This document shows positions 30,148-63,322 of a stretch of DNA of 64,000 bases, piece by piece (the stretch's first letter is position 1; each line of letters opens with the position of its first letter). The stretch spans positions 62,001-126,000 of IMG/VR virus record IMGVR_UViG_3300035703_000006; one strand, written 5' to 3'. Position numbers and translations under genes: made by a program. The notes under the pieces are model-generated. The model had not been told where the DNA came from, searched no databases, and was given only the letters and a program-made list of their open reading frames with translations.

Positions 30148-31306
30148 AGTCAATTCAGAAGAGGGAATTAAGGGTATGACTGTATTTAATACAACCTCTG
30201 TAGATTTTAAAAAACAACCAATGTTTTTTGGTAATCCTCTTGGCGTACAAAGATATGATCAATACAAGTATCCCGTCTTTGACAAATTGACCCAACAGCA
30301 ATTAGGTTACTTTTGGAGACCTGAGGAGGTCTCCCTCCAAAAAGATCGTGCAGATTATCAGACACTGAGACCTGAACAAAAACACATTTTTACATCTAAT
30401 CTTAAATATCAAATTCTTCTTGATTCGGTTCAAGGAAGAGGTCCTGGTATGGCATTTATTCCATATTGCTCTCTTCCTGAATTGGAAGCTTGTATGACTG
30501 TGTGGGAGTTTATGGAGATGATTCATTCTAGATCTTATACGTATATTATCAAAAATGTGTATGCAGATCCTACAGAAGTATTTGATACTATCTTAAATAA
30601 TGAAAGGATTCTTGAGAGAGCATCTTCAGTTACTGAAGCATATGATGATTTTATTAATGCTGCACAGAGATATGGTACATCTAATGAGTGGATTTTTGCA
30701 CAAGAAAATGCTGGTTATGCAAGAGAAGATCGTATTGAATTAAAAAGAAAACTTTATCGTGCTATTGCAAATGTCAACATTCTCGAAGGTATCAGGTTTT
30801 ATGTTTCGTTCGCTTGCAGCTTTGCATTTGGTGAACTCAAACTTATGGAAGGATCAGCTAAAATTATCTCTCTCATCGCAAGAGACGAAAATCAGCACCT
30901 TGTCATTACTCAAAACATCCTCAATAAGTGGAGTGAAGGGGATGATCCAGAGATGCAGCAAATTGCTAAAGAGGAACAAGATTGGGTAATCAATCAATTT
31001 AAAAATTGTGTAAATCAAGAAAAGTCTTGGGCACAATACTTATTTAAAGATGGATCCATGATTGGTTTAAATGATAAACTTCTTAACAATTATGTTGAGT
31101 GGATTGCAAATCGTCGTATGAAATCTATTGGCATTAAACCAATTTATGATATTTCTGCAAAGAATAATCCTCTTCCTTGGACTGAGCATTGGATTAGTTC
31201 TAAGGGACTCCAAGTTGCTCCGCAAGAAACAGAAGTTGAATCTTATGTTGTTGGTGGCATTAAACAGGATGTCACAAAAGATTCTTTTAGTGGATTTAAA
31301 CTTTAA
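30128..31306 (+). CDS. nrdB: Ribonucleotide reductase beta subunit
   Basis: FWRPEEV, DSVQGR, EMIHSRSY, EGIRFYVSF, RDENQH and VAPQETE motifs. Confidence 0.97.
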   Translation: MTVVKFRVNSEEGIKGMTVFNTTSVDFKKQPMFFGNPLGVQRYDQYKYPVFDKLTQQQLGYFWRPEEVSLQKDRADYQTLRPEQKHIFTSNLKYQILLDSVQGRGPGMAFIPYCSLPELEACMTVWEFMEMIHSRSYTYIIKNVYADPTEVFDTILNNERILERASSVTEAYDDFINAAQRYGTSNEWIFAQENAGYAREDRIELKRKLYRAIANVNILEGIRFYVSFACSFAFGELKLMEGSAKIISLIARDENQHLVITQNILNKWSEGDDPEMQQIAKEEQDWVINQFKNCVNQEKSWAQYLFKDGSMIGLNDKLLNNYVEWIANRRMKSIGIKPIYDISAKNNPLPWTEHWISSKGLQVAPQETEVESYVVGGIKQDVTKDSFSGFKL

Positions 31307-31332: not shown

Positions 31333-31362
31333 TTGACTATATAACTGCAGAAGAGGTATAGT
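31333..31362 (+). promoter_or_regulatory. Host-RNAP (early) promoter TTGACT-18 bp-TATAGT
   Basis: Would start transcription near 31369-31371, at the first riboswitch-like element. Confidence 0.6.
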
Positions 31363-31370
31363 ACCTCTAA

Positions 31371-31421
31371 CGTTCATTTGCTATTTGCAAATAGCAAACG
31401 GAAGTAAGCCGACTCGGAACG
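31371..31421 (+). ncRNA. glnA-type glutamine riboswitch-like aptamer 1
   Basis: P1 CGTTC/GAACG; P2 is a perfect 22-nt palindrome (31377-31398); junction CGGAAGTAAG matches the glnA E-loop motif; P3 is short and atypical. Confidence 0.65.
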
Positions 31422-31441
31422 GATCAAAACCTACTATAGGT

Positions 31442-31610
31442 CGTTCATCTATGGAAGCACTCATTCTAACTTGCTTGCAGGCACAATTAATTGTTGGGAG
31501 AATTCATAAACAGGAAATTCCCAAACAAGTAAAGAATGATTTAATTTGGGAGATTAAACAAATTTCTCCCAAAGAGTGCAAAATAGACGCAAAAGCCGAC
31601 TGAAGGAACG
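31442..31610 (+). ncRNA. glnA-type glutamine riboswitch-like aptamer 2 with ORF-containing P2 loop
   Basis: 5' CGTTCA-TCTAT; 3' ATAGA-CGCAAAAGCCGACTGAAGGAACG; shares GCCGACT..GGAACG with aptamer 1. Confidence 0.6.
31451..31603 (+). CDS. 50-aa peptide nested inside aptamer 2 (MEALILTCLQAQ...ECKIDAKAD)
   Basis: Open frame from ATG 31451 to TGA 31603; two Cys; the last codons are also the aptamer 3' strand. Confidence 0.6.
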   Translation: MEALILTCLQAQLIVGRIHKQEIPKQVKNDLIWEIKQISPKECKIDAKAD

Positions 31611-31641
31611 CTCTTTAACCTCAAAATTAAGGAGAACCCTA

Positions 31642-31800
31642 ATGTCTAAAGTCGTTTATAGAGGTTGTCAGTATGACACCGAAGATGCAAAAAAAGAGTA
31701 TATATCCTGGTATAACCAAACTCATGCCCCTGCACATCCACAAAATACATATCGTGGAGTAGCATATCGTCCATGCAAAAACATGGAGGTGCAAAAATGA
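31642..31800 (+). CDS. DUF4278-like small protein
   Basis: Two YRG motifs (VVYRGCQY, TYRGVAY); AAGGAG Shine-Dalgarno. Confidence 0.8.
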   Translation: MSKVVYRGCQYDTEDAKKEYISWYNQTHAPAHPQNTYRGVAYRPCKNMEVQK

Positions 31801-31898
31801 ATACTTACTTCGTTCTTTATCTTAAGAGAAAAGCAAAAAAAGAAAAACTTCTTAAACTTGCACAATTAAATATGGCAAAGCAACCACAAGTTGCTTGA
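31797..31898 (+). CDS. 33-aa basic peptide (MNTYFVLYLKRKAKKEKLLKLAQLNMAKQPQVA)
   Basis: ATGA-coupled to the DUF4278-like gene; GGAGG upstream; followed by a terminator. Confidence 0.55.
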   Translation: MNTYFVLYLKRKAKKEKLLKLAQLNMAKQPQVA

Positions 31899-31902
31899 AT
31901 TT

Positions 31903-31935
31903 AGAGGGGCATTTGTCCCTCTTTTTTTATAAATA
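31903..31935 (+). terminator. Terminator (AGAGGG/CCCTCT + T run) abutting late promoter TATAAATA (31928-31935)
   Basis: Seen directly in the sequence. Confidence 0.8.
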
Positions 31936-36464: not shown

Positions 36465-36535
36465 GCGGATATGGTGTAGTGGTAACATACCATCCTTCCA
36501 AGTTGTAGTCACGGGTTCGAATCCCGTTATCCGCT
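36465..36535 (+). tRNA. tRNA-Gly (anticodon TCC), no encoded CCA
   Basis: Acceptor GCGGATA/TATCCGC, D-loop AGTGGTA, loop CTTCCAA, T-arm ACGGG-TTCGAAT-CCCGT, discriminator U; two mismatches in the anticodon stem. Confidence 0.88.
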
Positions 36536-61885: not shown

Positions 61886-61959
61886 GGTAAACAAATGTTA
61901 CGAAATCAAAACAATTCTTAACATTGTTAAACACCCGATTAACCGAGACCTATGGGTGT

Positions 61960-62050
61960 ATAAATTACGTCTCTCATGCCCACACTGGAGGGTGGTGTGG
62001 GAAATAACGTACTATCCAGTTCCCCCTGGACTTTTACTTACCCTTTAACG
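61960..62050 (+). ncRNA. Structured psbA leader, PhotoRC-II-like
   Basis: ACGTCTCTCAT, then CCCACAC/GTGTGGG and TCCAG/CTGGA hairpins directly 5' of psbA; family identity from recollection only. Confidence 0.5.
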
Positions 62051-62053
62051 AAA

Positions 62054-63064
62054 ATGACTGCTTCTATTGCACAACGCAATTCTACTACTAATCTCTGGGA
62101 ATCTTTTTGCCAGTGGGTTACTTCAACCGATAACCGCCTTTATGTGGGTTGGTTCGGTGTTCTTATGATTCCAACGTTGCTTGCTGCAACGACTTGCTTC
62201 ATCATCGCATTCATCGGTGCTCCCCCTGTGGACATTGATGGAATTCGTGAACCCGTTGCTGGTTCACTCATGTACGGAAACAACATCATCTCTGGTGCTG
62301 TGATTCCTTCGTCCAACGCAATTGGACTGCACTTTTACCCCATCTGGGAAGCTGCTTCTCTAGATGAATGGCTTTACAATGGTGGACCTTTCCAACTGGT
62401 AGTGTTCCACTTCCTCATTGGTATTTACTGCTATATGGGTCGTGAGTGGGAACTTTCATATCGTCTAGGTATGCGTCCTTGGATCATGGTTGCTTACTCT
62501 GCACCTGTTGCTGCTGCAAGCGCAGTGTTCCTGGTCTATCCTTTTGGTCAAGGTTCTTTCTCTGATGCAATGCCTCTAGGTATCTCTGGCACCTTTAACT
62601 ACATGCTTGTGTTCCAGGCAGAGCACAACATCCTGATGCACCCCTTCCATATGCTTGGAGTTGCTGGTGTGTTTGGTGGTTCTCTGTTCTCTGCTATGCA
62701 TGGATCTCTTGTTACCTCCTCACTGGTTCGTGAAACCACTGAGAATGAGTCACAGAACTATGGTTACAAGTTCGGTCAAGAAGAAGAGACTTACAATATT
62801 GTTGCTGCTCATGGTTATTTCGGACGCCTTATTTTCCAATACGCTTCCTTCAATAACTCCCGTTCGCTGCACTTCTTCCTCGCTGCCTGGCCTGTTGTCG
62901 GTATCTGGTTTACTGCTCTTGGTGTAAGCACTATGGCTTTTAACCTTAATGGATTTAATTTCAACCAGTCTATCGTTGATGGTCAGGGTAAGGTTATTAA
63001 CACTTGGGCTGACGTTCTGAACCGTGCAGGTCTGGGCATGGAAGTGATGCACGAGCGCAACGCT
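62054..63064 (+). CDS. psbA: Photosystem II D1 protein, exon 1 (337 codons)
   Basis: [15 protein letters not shown]...MHERNA; true start at 62054 (MTASIAQR). Confidence 0.98.
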
Positions 63065-63322
63065 AGATTTGTTGGTGTTGTTGCCTAGTAATAGGCATTA
63101 GAAAAATCGGGTTAAACGGGGAAACTCTCAAGTAGACAATCCCGTACCAAGTCAGAAAGGGTTTAAGTTTTCTGAAAGGTCTAACGACTAGGTAGTGAGT
63201 CCCAACAATAATCTACCCACGAATGCCCGACTCCTTAATAAACATAAGGATGAAGAGATAGTCTGAACTTACTGGCGACAGTAAGAAGTAAAGAATAAAG
63301 AGTCTTTACGATAACACAATTG
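63065..63322 (+). ncRNA. Group I intron (258 nt, IA-like, ORF-less) in psbA
   Basis: Exon ends in U and intron ends in G. P1: CAACGCU pairs with GGUGUUG. P3 TCGGG/CCCGA; P4 ACGGGGA/TCCCGT; P7 GACTA/TAGTC; extra P7.1 GGTAG/CTACC; P9 TTACTG-GCGA-CAGTAA. Removal restores HERNA|HNFPLDL. Confidence 0.95.

What the first reader, a model, noticed from the sequence alone, without database searches (positions are those of the whole stretch)
31333..31610. Tandem glutamine-riboswitch-like elements, the second with a whole protein-coding gene nested in its P2 loop
Seen directly: an early promoter fires into element 1 (CGTTC, 22-nt palindromic P2, CGGAAGTAAG, GCCGACT, GGAACG). After a short hairpin linker comes element 2, whose 5' half (CGTTCA-TCTAT) and 3' half (ATAGA-CGCAAAAGCCGACTGAAGGAACG) are about 130 nt apart, with a 50-codon ORF spanning the gap. 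The start codon lies in the P2 5' strand (TCT-ATG). The last codons (I-D-A-K-A-D-stop) are the aptamer 3' strand, and the stop lies in the junction. Established: glnA-class riboswitches bind glutamine, occur in tandem, and control DUF4278/gifB genes in cyanobacteria. Inference: translation of the nested ORF and aptamer folding are mutually exclusive, giving a ribosome-coupled nitrogen sensor in a phage. I do not know this architecture as described.
Basis: partly seen in the sequence, partly recalled or inferred. Interest (0 to 1): 0.88.

Follow-up and report, generated by a model that had tools for sequence, protein, structure and literature searches.

The report
Interlocked glutamine riboswitch pair hosting a gene
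A cyanophage mRNA leader carries two glutamine-sensing RNA modules that appear to be built from each other's halves, one nested inside the other, with a real 50-codon gene in a loop of the inner module; neither feature appears in the riboswitch papers I could read.

Summary
Element 1 (31371-31421) scores 34.3 bits against Rfam Glutamine RF01739 (cut-off 35). The two halves of element 2 lie 130 nt apart around a 50-codon ORF (31451-31603). The ORF is under purifying selection and occurs in more than 400 viral contigs.

The "tandem" reading is only partly right. In 123 distinct relatives, including many without the ORF, each element is mismatched with its own partner. Element 1 lacks the GAA loop-E strand and the closing C. 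Element 2 lacks AGUA and reads ACGC. Covariation instead links the elements crosswise:
- the "linchpin" pair joins element 1 position 23 to the base after element 2's GGAACG (G:C 84, C:G 39, no exceptions);
- a reciprocal inner pair is C:G in 111 and G:C in 2;
- a shared P3 helix forms between the two AGCCGACU copies, with many compensatory changes.

The best model is an outer, complete type-I aptamer with a circularly permuted inner aptamer inserted in its P3. The gene sits in the inner P2 loop. Relatives carry other small genes in either P2 loop, nearly always with the AUG inside the P2 stem.

Reciprocal control of the nested and downstream (DUF4278-like) genes by glutamine is inferred, not shown. 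I rate this a new variant of a known riboswitch class.

The parts
31333..31362 (+). Sigma-70-like promoter (TTGACT, 18 nt, TATAGT). The -10 box sits in the loop of a 7-bp hairpin at 31352-31368.
   Evidence: 10 of 12 matches. TTGACT and TATAAT are conserved in relatives, and the hairpin arms covary. The transcription start was not measured.
31371..31375 (+). Outer P1, 5' strand (CGUUC). In the nested model it pairs with 31606-31610.
   Evidence: The MFE fold of the window and RNAalifold on 48 relatives both choose this long-range pairing. The strands never vary, so there is no covariation in P1 itself.
31377..31398 (+). Outer P2 hairpin (22 nt).
   Evidence: Strong covariation in relatives: columns 8-10 with 25-27. 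In some relatives this loop holds a 60-70-codon ORF.
31399..31406 (+). Outer J2/3, CGGAAGUA. It holds the G22 equivalent (31400), linchpin G23 (31401) and the loop-E 5' strand AGUA.
   Evidence: Matches the Rfam consensus. G31401 covaries with C31611: G:C 84, C:G 39, of 123.
31407..31414 (+). Shared P3, 5' strand (AGCCGACU). It pairs with 31594-31601.
   Evidence: Cross-element covariation: column pair 37-104 is AU 35, GC 7, GU 3, CG 2; pair 45-95 is GC 15, UA 14, AU 4; pair 42-99 is GC 42, GU 3, AU 2. Wholly different but complementary P3 sequences occur in L130, L136, L113, L217 and L266.
31416..31422 (+). Inner P1 first strand (G + GAACG, 31417-31421), followed by inner linchpin G31422.
   Evidence: Pairs with CGUUC 31442-31446 in the MFE fold and in RNAalifold. 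G31422 pairs with C31590: C:G 111, G:C 2, of 123.
31423..31441 (+). Loop of inner P1, here holding a 5-bp mini-hairpin (31429-31441).
   Evidence: Most relatives have only 2-4 nt here.
31442..31446 (+). Inner P1 second strand (CGUUC).
31448..31462 (+). Inner P2, 5' strand. UCUAU (31448-31452) contains the A and U of the start codon. A possible extension is GCACUC (31457-31462).
   Evidence: The basal 5 pairs hold in 60 of 60 distinct ORF sequences. The extension is mostly paired and synonymous change is suppressed there. The MFE fold forms both.
31451..31603 (+). Nested gene: 50 codons plus TGA. It is predicted to be a small two-helix protein with conserved Cys8 and Cys43.
   Evidence: 199 clusters of relatives, mostly exactly 50 aa. 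442 viral loci encode a relative. The nonsynonymous/synonymous ratio of single-base codon differences is 0.33. AlphaFold2 mean pLDDT is 88, with helices 2-20 and 25-38 and lower confidence over the last ten residues. PHROG 504, unknown function.
31574..31587 (+). Inner P2, 3' strand: GAGUGC (31574-31579) and AUAGA (31583-31587), inside codons 42-46.
   Evidence: Codons 45-47 show no synonymous variation in 60 distinct sequences.
31588..31593 (+). Inner J2/3, CGCAAA, holding the G22 equivalent (31589) and linchpin C31590. It resembles the CGCA strand of glutamine-II.
   Evidence: Conserved in ORF-less relatives too. For comparison with the glutamine-II sequence and structure see PMC6698751.
31594..31601 (+). 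Shared P3, 3' strand (AGCCGACU). Its last U is the first base of the stop codon.
31602..31611 (+). Outer J3/1, GAAG (loop-E 3' strand); outer P1 3' strand GAACG (31606-31610); linchpin C31611.
   Evidence: Perfect match to the Rfam 3' consensus GAAGGAACGC.
31611..31634 (+). Expression platform: anti-SD CUCUUUAA (31611-31618) pairs with UUAAGGAG (31627-31634).
   Evidence: An 8-bp hairpin appears in every ViennaRNA fold. It is conserved in most relatives. Linchpin C31611 is its first base.
31642..31800 (+). Regulated gene: a 52-aa DUF4278/IF17-like peptide with two YRG motifs.
   Evidence: Pfam DUF4278, E 3e-4, 21.5 bits, just under the cut-off. PHROG 5049, E 7e-12. Association of glutamine riboswitches with DUF4278 genes: PMC6212724.
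31797..31898 (+). A third small ORF (33 aa). Its ATG overlaps the preceding stop (ATGA). It is followed by a terminator.
   Evidence: The homologous ORF is annotated in S-SRM01. It has no family match.
31903..31922 (+). Intrinsic-terminator-like hairpin plus a T run; the likely end of the transcription unit.

Best explanation
The region is the leader of a small early operon of a T4-like cyanophage. It holds two glutamine-aptamer modules that are interlocked rather than side by side.

The outer module is a complete type-I (glnA) aptamer assembled from distant pieces:
- P1 5' strand, P2 and CGGAAGUA from "element 1";
- GAAG-GAACG-C from the 3' end of "element 2";
- a P3 helix formed by the two AGCCGACU copies.

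The inner module is a circularly permuted aptamer lying inside P3. Element 1's GGAACG-G pairs with element 2's CGUUC as a hairpin. It is followed by the inner P2 and by CGCAAA, whose C pairs with the G after GGAACG.

The 50-codon gene lies in the loop of the inner P2. Its AUG is in the P2 5' strand. Its last six codons and its stop are the P2 3' strand, the inner junction and the P3 3' strand.

Inferred working:
- When glutamine is bound, the outer linchpin C31611 is captured. The anti-SD hairpin (31611-31618 with 31627-31634) opens and the DUF4278/IF17-like gene is translated, as shown for the gifB type-I switch.
- The same folded state buries the AUG of the nested gene, so the two genes should respond in opposite directions.
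- Conversely, ribosomes on the nested gene unzip inner P2 and P3 and prevent the outer aptamer from forming.

Shown here: the anatomy, the cross-element pairing, that the ORF codes for protein, and that the design recurs.
Inferred: ligand binding by both sites, the direction of control, and the coupling to translation.
For: Each element is incomplete on its own.
- Element 1 has AGUA but its own 3' half is CUC-GGAACG-G, with no GAA and no closing C (alignment).
- Element 2 has GAA and the closing C, but ACGCAAA in place of ACGGAAGUA.

Cross-element covariation in 123 distinct tandems:
- Outer linchpin: G:C 84 and C:G 39, so 100% Watson-Crick.
- The element's own partner would give G.G, G.A or G.U in 82, and C.C in 82.
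- Inner linchpin: C:G 111, G:C 2, and C.A or C.U 10.

On 48 ORF-less relatives (alignment A2):
- The nested structure has 94.6% of cells paired, 14 pairs with double changes and a covariation score of 0.281, against 0.086 in shuffles and no more than 0.069 when the partners are slid.
- The tandem structure pairs its own linchpins in only 52% and 50% of sequences. Its local 2-bp P3 hairpins fail in 27 of 40 and 22 of 34 sequences.

The P3 cross helix keeps pairing through quite different sequences: AGUCGC/CGACU, AGUCAC/UGACU, AAACGAC/GUUGUUU, GGACGG/CCGCCC, GGCUAACG/CGUUGAGCU. The changes are complementary, not identical, so copy homogenisation does not explain them.

Two structure predictions made without this model choose the nested P1 pairing:
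- ViennaRNA MFE of the window is -67.9 kcal/mol, against -64.9 when the tandem fold is forced.
- RNAalifold on A2 gives the same nested P1s.

A published Rfam scan of phage S-CREM1 reports one glnA hit of 99 nt at 44.0 bits spanning both elements (PMC9964418 Table 4). Here the single elements of that locus score 33.5 and 20.4 bits.

The ORF is a real gene.
- The nonsynonymous/synonymous ratio is 0.33, and relatives are mostly exactly 50 aa.
- Synonymous sites are frozen where the RNA model needs them: relative entropy is 0.15 in codons 44-50 and 0.24 in codons 2-5, against 0.58 in the core.
- The same RNA sequence is conserved in relatives that have no ORF.

The design recurs.
- In 110 distinct ORF-bearing P2 loops the closing stem averages 5.7 contiguous pairs, against 2.7 in mismatched controls.
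- The AUG lies 3-4 nt after CGUUCA in nearly all of them.
- ORFs occupy the outer P2, the inner P2, both or neither: 20, 52, 21 and 52 of 145.

P2 and P3 tips are peripheral in the solved type-I aptamer; the crystallised construct carries a foreign loop on P3 (sequence in PMC5393176).
Against: - P1 strands never vary, so the swapped P1 pairing rests on thermodynamic prediction and on consistency with the solved structure, not on covariation.
- P3 carries two conserved mismatches (C.A and A.C) in the commonest sequence. ViennaRNA and RNAalifold do not predict P3.
- The inner module lacks a loop-E motif. In 10 of 123 sequences its linchpin is not Watson-Crick, so it may not bind glutamine.
- Two loci (the L066 type) carry element 2 and the ORF without element 1. 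They cannot form the nested fold.
- Sequences in the sample are related, and the searches were biased by the patterns used.
- Nothing here measures ligand binding, translation or the direction of regulation.
- I could not read Ames & Breaker 2011 or Ren et al. 2015, so an earlier description cannot be excluded.
Confidence: 0.65

Rival explanations
1. Two independent aptamers in tandem. Each folds with its own P1, and the second merely has a long P2 loop containing the ORF. Together they give the 'pseudo-cooperative' response described for glutamine doublets.
For: - The motif order CGUUC...GGAACG, CGUUC...GGAACG reads naturally as two units.
- Rfam aligns each element separately.
- True independent doublets exist in other viral contigs. 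Both units there are complete, and each has its own P3 hairpin (L100, L119, L173, L193, L199).
- A review counts 157 glutamine doublets as pseudo-cooperative (PMC9481103).
- The element's own P1 of element 1 would form first during transcription.
Against: - Own-element linchpins are mismatched in about two thirds of sequences.
- Local P3 hairpins are broken by the common variants. Some relatives leave only 6 nt where P3 should be.
- Element 1 lacks the GAA strand and element 2 lacks the AGUA strand of loop E.
- There is a single expression platform.
- MFE and RNAalifold prefer the nested pairing.
Confidence: 0.08
2. The nested fold is real, but the ORFs are passengers. They are small phage genes that entered the tolerant P2 loops as cassettes, by recombination at the conserved aptamer cores. 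They keep P2 closure only so as not to break the switch, and their translation is not regulated by glutamine.
For: - All four states (no ORF, ORF in outer P2, ORF in inner P2, ORF in both) occur among close relatives with near-identical flanks.
- Distant relatives of the protein are ordinary free-standing genes without aptamer halves.
- ORF families move between the two P2 positions: family Y is in the outer P2 in most loci and in the inner P2 in L287.
- When the downstream gene is lost, the 3' half decays while the ORF stays (L017).
Against: - The AUG sits within the P2 5' strand at a nearly fixed offset across families that have otherwise diverged beyond easy recognition. A passive passenger does not need this.
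- Common descent of the ORF-plus-stem unit could also explain the fixed offset.
Confidence: 0.25
3. Translational coupling. Ribosomes finishing the nested ORF at UGA 31601-31603 cover the outer P1 3' strand and the anti-SD (31611-18). This frees the SD and switches the downstream gene on, so the ORF acts as a leader peptide that overrides or supplements glutamine sensing.
For: - The stop codon lies 8 nt before the anti-SD and 38 nt before the next start.
- In this ORF family the reading frame always runs to the end of P3.
- In S-SRM01 a compensatory P3 change removes the stop, and the ORF then ends inside the anti-SD.
Against: - ORF-less relatives keep the same platform, so the platform works without a leader ORF.
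- In the L114 group and in outer-P2 ORFs, the stop lies in or before the P2 3' strand, far from the platform.
Confidence: 0.15
4. Element 2 is a decayed copy kept only because it now encodes the C-terminus of the protein. It has no RNA function.
For: - ACGCAAA departs from the type-I consensus.
- Rfam gives no hit in place.
Against: - The same nucleotides are conserved where there is no ORF.
- Synonymous positions of codons 45-50 never vary.
- These nucleotides covary with element 1.
- The protein tail has lower predicted confidence than the rest. Distant homologues end soon after the second Cys, without this tail.
Confidence: 0.02

Closest known systems
Glutamine-I (glnA RNA, RF01739) riboswitch, e.g. 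the Synechocystis gifB leader
   Same: - The outer module has every consensus element: CGUUC/GAACG P1, a variable P2, ACGGAAGUA, P3, GAAG and the closing C.
- It sits before a DUF4278/IF17-like gene.
- The nucleotides after the linchpin can pair with the SD, as proposed for gifB (PMC6212724).
   Different: - Its two halves are 185 nt apart in the window.
- P3 is not a hairpin. It is a helix between two distant strands that encloses a second aptamer-like module and a gene.
- The default Rfam scan misses it.
Glutamine-II (Downstream-peptide, RF01704) riboswitch
   Same: - The inner module has the CGCA strand after its hairpin.
- Its linchpin has the C:G orientation.
- It has no loop E, as in glutamine-II (PMC6698751).
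   Different: - The strand order is circularly permuted: GGAACG-G comes before CGUUCA, joined by a 3-5-nt loop.
- There is no glutamine-II P2 flanking GGAACG.
- The Rfam score is only 15-17 bits against a cut-off of 33.
Independent tandem glutamine doublets ('pseudo-cooperative', PMC9481103)
   Same: - Two aptamer-like units for one ligand lie in one leader.
- True examples occur in related viral contigs.
   Different: Here the units exchange halves, share P3 and have a single expression platform. If both sites bind, coupling would be structural rather than statistical.
Tandem glycine riboswitch
   Same: Two homologous aptamers lie on one RNA with one expression platform and are physically coupled (general knowledge; PMC5066625 title and abstract).
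   Different: The glycine aptamers are complete units that touch through tertiary contacts. They are not nested, not permuted, and do not share a helix built from both.
Phage group I introns with an ORF looped out of a peripheral stem (e.g. T4 td / I-TevI)
   Same: A structured functional RNA carries a protein gene in a peripheral loop, so translation and RNA folding can interfere. This comparison is from my own knowledge and was not checked here.
   Different: That RNA is a ribozyme, not a ligand sensor. Here the start codon lies in the aptamer stem itself, and part of the protein is encoded by the aptamer core.

Membership tests
Glutamine-I riboswitch (RF01739): outer composite module | P1 CGUUC/GAACG plus a variable P2 hairpin | tested here: met
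   31371-75 with 31606-10 in the MFE fold and in RNAalifold. P2 covaries.
Glutamine-I riboswitch (RF01739): outer composite module | Loop-E motif: AGUA in J2/3 facing GAA in J3/1, next to P3 | tested here: met
   AGUA is at 31403-06 and GAA at 31602-04. They flank the two strands of the cross P3. The motif definition is from PMC5393176.
Glutamine-I riboswitch (RF01739): outer composite module | Long-range linchpin pair between G23 and the C after P1 | tested here: met
   G31401:C31611. In relatives the pair is G:C 84 and C:G 39, of 123.
Glutamine-I riboswitch (RF01739): outer composite module | Reaches the Rfam gathering score | tested here: inconclusive
   The tools cannot score the composite with the insert removed. 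Element 1 alone scores 34.3. The compact element 2 of L202 scores 35.4. A published scan gives 44.0 bits over both elements in S-CREM1, which Rfam 15 did not reproduce here.
Glutamine-I riboswitch (RF01739): outer composite module | Selective binding of L-glutamine | not testable with these tools
   Needs in-line probing or calorimetry.
Glutamine-I riboswitch: element 1 taken alone | Own GAA strand and own closing C | tested here: not met
   Its own 3' half reads CUC-GGAACG-G. The Rfam alignment shows deletions at GAA. Own linchpin is G.G, G.A or G.U in 82 of 123.
Glutamine-I riboswitch: element 2 taken alone | ACGGAAGUA junction, with G23 pairing to its own closing C | tested here: not met
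   It reads ACGCAAA. The own pair would be C.C in 82 of 123.
Glutamine-II riboswitch (RF01704): inner module | CGCA strand with a C:G long-range pair | tested here: met
   C31590:G31422. In relatives the pair is C:G 111 and G:C 2, of 123.
Glutamine-II riboswitch (RF01704): inner module | H-type pseudoknot connectivity (5' CGUUC, hairpin, CGCA, then P2 flanking GGAACG) and the Rfam score | tested here: not met
   The strand order is permuted. The score is 15-17 bits against a cut-off of 33.
Pseudo-cooperative tandem riboswitch | Two complete aptamers, each with its own expression platform | tested here: not met
   One SD-sequestering platform follows the second element. The halves are exchanged between elements.
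DUF4278 / IF17-like peptide (downstream gene) | Pfam DUF4278 match and YRG motifs | tested here: inconclusive
   21.5 bits against a cut-off of 25.3, E 3e-4. Two YRG motifs are present.

The most novel reading that the evidence does not exclude
One RNA device builds two glutamine sites from exchanged halves: an outer type-I aptamer and a circularly permuted inner aptamer sharing P3. Binding would then be truly cooperative. The device also uses its own P2 stems as expression platforms for genes lodged in the aptamer loops. A single sensor would switch embedded genes off and the downstream IF17-like gene on, while ribosomes feed back on sensing.
Probability: 0.3. Interest if true: 0.92.

Novelty: new variant of a known kind. 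Interest (0 to 1): 0.85.

Why it matters
- Glutamine riboswitch doublets are currently treated as independent units (PMC9481103). Here a large group of them, in marine and freshwater cyanophages including the laboratory phage S-PM2, appears to be one interlocked structure containing a circularly permuted aptamer. That would be a new way to build a two-site RNA sensor and a natural case of aptamer permutation and domain swapping.
- Protein genes lodged in aptamer loops, with start codons in aptamer stems and protein tails dictated by the aptamer core, would be a new kind of overlap between coding and sensing RNA.
- They would also give a direct handle on how ribosomes and riboswitch folding compete.
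- Practically, default Rfam scans miss or mis-segment these elements, so riboswitch use by phages is probably under-counted.
- The device controls an IF17-like peptide, so it bears on how phages read and manipulate host nitrogen status.

Tried and rejected
- The Rfam scan of the window at gathering thresholds finds nothing here. The E-value scan finds element 1 only.
- A covariance model of the nested structure (R1, from A2) was searched over the window with filters off. It aligned only element 1, by a local end, and could not span the 130-nt ORF. This reflects a limit of the model's hit length, not evidence against the nested fold.
- The pattern GAACG..CGTTCA..ACGCAA was too loose for the 596-Gb genome collection. 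The 120 rows returned were chance matches and none had the full signature.
- Ames & Breaker 2011 and Ren et al. 2015 could not be read. Their content is taken second-hand from PMC6698751 and PMC5393176.
It was repeated with A3.
- Gene conversion between the two AGCCGACU copies was considered as the source of their co-variation. I rejected it because the changes are complementary and at opposite ends, not identical.
- The possibility that the ORF is spurious was rejected on the substitution pattern and length conservation.
- No fold search was run on the 50-aa two-helix model, since matches to so small a fold would say little.
Full report
**Setting.** The window is from a T4-like cyanophage. 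nrdB ends at 31306. A PhotoRC-II RNA, a tRNA and a group I intron lie elsewhere in the window. The closest cultured relatives of this stretch are the freshwater Synechococcus phages DSL-LC03, DSL-LC02 and S-SRM01. The window matches IMG/VR contig 3300035703_000006 at 100% over the nested ORF.

- A sigma-70-like promoter (31333-31362) and an intrinsic-terminator-like hairpin (31903-31922) bracket a short unit.
- The unit holds the leader RNA, a 50-codon ORF (31451-31603), a 52-aa DUF4278/IF17-like gene (31642-31800) and a 33-aa ORF (31797-31898).
- Element 1 (31369-31425) matches Rfam Glutamine RF01739 at 34.3 bits, E 7.8e-6, just below the cut-off of 35. A default scan is therefore silent.
- Element 2 is not detected in place.

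**The ORF is a gene.**
- It has 199 clusters of relatives, mostly exactly 50 aa, and 442 viral loci encode a relative.
- In 60 distinct nucleotide versions, single-base codon differences are synonymous three times as often as not. The N/S ratio is 0.33, where no selection would give about 3.
- AlphaFold2 predicts two helices (2-20, 25-38) with mean pLDDT 88 and lower confidence over the last ten residues.
- A profile search of 1.8 billion representatives finds only 48 clusters.
- Distant members end soon after the second conserved Cys. Two that I looked up are ordinary free-standing genes with no aptamer sequence around them. The protein family therefore exists independently of the riboswitch, and one branch of it lives inside the riboswitch.
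- Synonymous change is almost absent in codons 45-50 and in the stop codon. It is also low in codons 2-5 and 42-43. These are exactly the positions the RNA model needs.

**ORF-less versions of element 2 exist.** A pattern scan of viral contigs returned many tandems before the same kind of gene. In these, the second element has an ordinary short P2 hairpin followed by the same CGCAAA(A/C)GCCGACUGAAGGAACGC. One of them (L202) scores 35.4 bits for element 2 and 25 bits for element 1. The window's element 2 is this element with a gene in its P2 loop.

**The two elements are not self-contained.** The type-I aptamer needs three things (PMC5393176; PMC6698751):
- a loop-E motif, AGUA facing GAA next to P3;
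- a G that forms a base triple in P1;
- a long-range linchpin pair between the next G and the C just after P1.

Element 1 has ACGGAAGUA, but its own 3' half is CUC-GGAACG-G. Element 2 has GAAG-GAACG-C, but its 5' half reads ACGCAAA. Taken crosswise, the pieces make one perfect type-I aptamer (element 1's 5' half with element 2's 3' half). The remainder has the C:G linchpin orientation of glutamine-II.

**Covariation supports the crosswise pairing.** In 123 distinct tandems of this kind:
- The outer cross pair is G:C in 84 and C:G in 39, never anything else.
- The own-element alternatives are mismatches in 82 sequences for each element.
- The inner cross pair is C:G in 111, G:C in 2 and not Watson-Crick in 10.

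The two AGCCGACU copies form an antiparallel helix of six Watson-Crick pairs with two conserved C.A/A.C mismatches.
- Its terminal pair varies U:A, G:C, A:U, and its other end varies A:U, C:G, G:C, G.U.
- Whole-helix replacements stay complementary: AGUCGC/CGACU, AGUCAC/UGACU, AAACGAC/GUUGUUU, GGACGG/CCGCCC.
- In some relatives only six nucleotides separate AAGUA from GGAACG, too few for a local P3 hairpin.

On an alignment of 48 ORF-less representatives (A2):
- The nested structure gives 94.6% paired cells, 14 pairs with double changes and a covariation score of 0.281. Shuffles give 0.086 and slid partners at most 0.069.
- The tandem structure pairs its own linchpins in only about half the sequences, and its local P3 pairs fail in most.

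**P1 is invariant, so its partner choice rests on other grounds.**
- The MFE fold of the window picks the nested P1s: -67.9 kcal/mol, against -64.9 with tandem P1s forced.
- RNAalifold on A2 does the same.
- The solved structure requires the strand followed by the linchpin C to pair with the strand attached to the P2 that leads into the linchpin G.
- A published Rfam scan of S-CREM1 lists one glnA hit of 99 nt at 44.0 bits covering both elements. That is more than either element scores here.

**The model in window coordinates.**
- Outer P1: 31371-75 with 31606-10.
- Outer P2: 31377-98.
- Outer J2/3: 31399-406.
- Shared P3: 31407-14 with 31594-601.
- Inner P1: 31417-21 with 31442-46, closed by a loop that begins with linchpin G31422.
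- Inner P2: 31448-52 with 31583-87, probably extended by 31457-62 with 31574-79, enclosing the ORF.
- Inner J2/3: 31588-93.
- Outer J3/1: 31602-05.
- Outer linchpin: G31401 with C31611.

Apart from the two linchpins, this is a fully nested secondary structure. P2 and P3 tips are the peripheral parts of the known aptamer; the crystallised construct itself carries a foreign loop on P3.

**Genes in aptamer loops recur.** Among 145 distinct tandems in my sample, which is biased by the search patterns, 52 have no ORF, 52 have one in the inner P2, 20 in the outer P2 and 21 in both.
- At least three protein families are involved. Two of them are probably remotely related to the window's ORF: hhalign gives 97% and 86% for two inner-P2 ORFs and 60% for an outer-P2 family.
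- The stems that close these 140-240-nt loops average 5.7 contiguous pairs, against 2.7 in mismatched controls. They covary: UCUAU/AUAGA, UCCUAU/AUAGGA, UCUUAUGG/CCAUAAGA, UCCAAU/AUUGGA, and a 13-bp stem in L427.
- The AUG is 3-4 nt after CGUUCA in nearly all cases, that is, inside the stem.
- A small group (L114, L427-L430) has loop-E strands on both sides of the cross P3, giving an almost symmetrical version.
- Fully independent doublets with their own P3 hairpins also exist.
- Cultured phages with the interlocked form include S-PM2 (compact, before S-PM2p190), S-CREM1 (compact), and P-RSM6, S-SRM01, DSL-LC02 and DSL-LC03 (gene in the inner P2; annotated as a hypothetical protein in four of the five records examined).

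**How it probably works (inferred).**
- The nucleotides from the outer linchpin C31611 onward form an 8-bp hairpin with the SD of the IF17-like gene.
- For the gifB type-I switch, glutamine raises translation, and capture of the linchpin C was proposed to free the ribosome-binding site (PMC6212724). The same logic fits here.
- The outer aptamer can close only when P3 forms, and P3 needs the far side of the inner module. The two modules should therefore fold together. If both bind glutamine, the response should be cooperative.
- The folded state buries the nested gene's AUG. Ribosomes on that gene unzip inner P2 and P3. I therefore expect opposite regulation of the nested and downstream genes, and a dependence of sensing on translation.
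- Alternatives are that the nested genes are unregulated passengers, or that termination at 31601-03 opens the anti-SD by coupling.
- Two natural variants bear on this. In L017 the downstream gene is gone and the 3' half has decayed, while the ORF remains. In the L066 type, element 1 is missing while element 2 and the ORF remain.

**Novelty.** The riboswitch class, its tandem occurrence, its presence in cyanophages and its link to DUF4278 genes are all known. In the papers I could search and read, I found no description of an interlocked or permuted arrangement, or of genes inside the aptamer. The 2022 review of tandem riboswitches lists glutamine doublets as pseudo-cooperative and never uses the word "nested". 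Two key papers were not available to me. I rate this a new variant of a known kind, with high interest.

Noticed in passing
L019, L039, L047, L007, L010 and others (about 270 nt upstream of the element-2 ORF start); also L203, L205, L211, L221, L228, L231, L240: In many relatives the first element's P2 loop also holds a gene of 59-73 codons, from at least two families. These proteins have a hydrophobic N-terminus and two conserved Cys. The AUG again lies in the P2 5' strand. In one family the last codons (I/L-G-R-K) and the stop are the P2 3' strand and the CGCAAGUAA junction.
   Followed up: partly
window 31352-31368: The -10 box TATAGT lies in the loop of a 7-bp hairpin. Relatives keep the hairpin with different arms (AGGTC/GACCT, GGGG/CCCC, AGAGG/CCTCT). 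It resembles the promoter stem-loops described for early genes of T4-type phages; that comparison is from memory.
   Followed up: no
L002 (S-SRM01) 1500-1720: A compensatory change of the outer end pair of P3 (A:U to C:G) turns the ORF's UGA into GGA. The protein gains five residues and stops at a UAA inside the anti-SD sequence.
   Followed up: partly
L066 (2 loci) and L017: L066 has element 2 plus the ORF with no element 1, a GAGA-looped local P3 and a different downstream gene. L017 has lost the downstream gene and its 3' half has decayed to GACTAAAGAAACA, but the ORF is intact.
   Followed up: partly
alignment A2, columns 40-101 and 43-98 (window 31409/31599 and 31412/31596): Two mismatches (C.A and A.C) inside the shared P3 are conserved in most sequences. 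They become U:A or A:U pairs in a minority. A similar pair of mismatches recurs in the L114 group. No explanation is offered.
   Followed up: no
L431 601-741, L434 95-241: Distant relatives of the nested protein (46-48 aa) are free-standing genes with no aptamer motifs. One follows a staphylococcal-nuclease-like gene.
   Followed up: partly
L437 (S-CREM1) 301-399: The GenBank record and PMC9964418 annotate a single 99-nt glnA riboswitch at 44.0 bits, spanning both elements. Rfam 15 here splits it into hits of 33.5 and 20.4 bits.
   Followed up: partly
window 61919-62015, 63055-63285, 36465-36535: Elsewhere in the window there are a PhotoRC-II RNA (84.6 bits), a group I intron (61.5 bits) and a tRNA (64.9 bits).
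   Followed up: no
window 31797-31898: A 33-aa ORF starts at an ATGA overlap with the stop of the DUF4278-like gene. It is conserved and annotated in S-SRM01 and has no family match.
   Followed up: no
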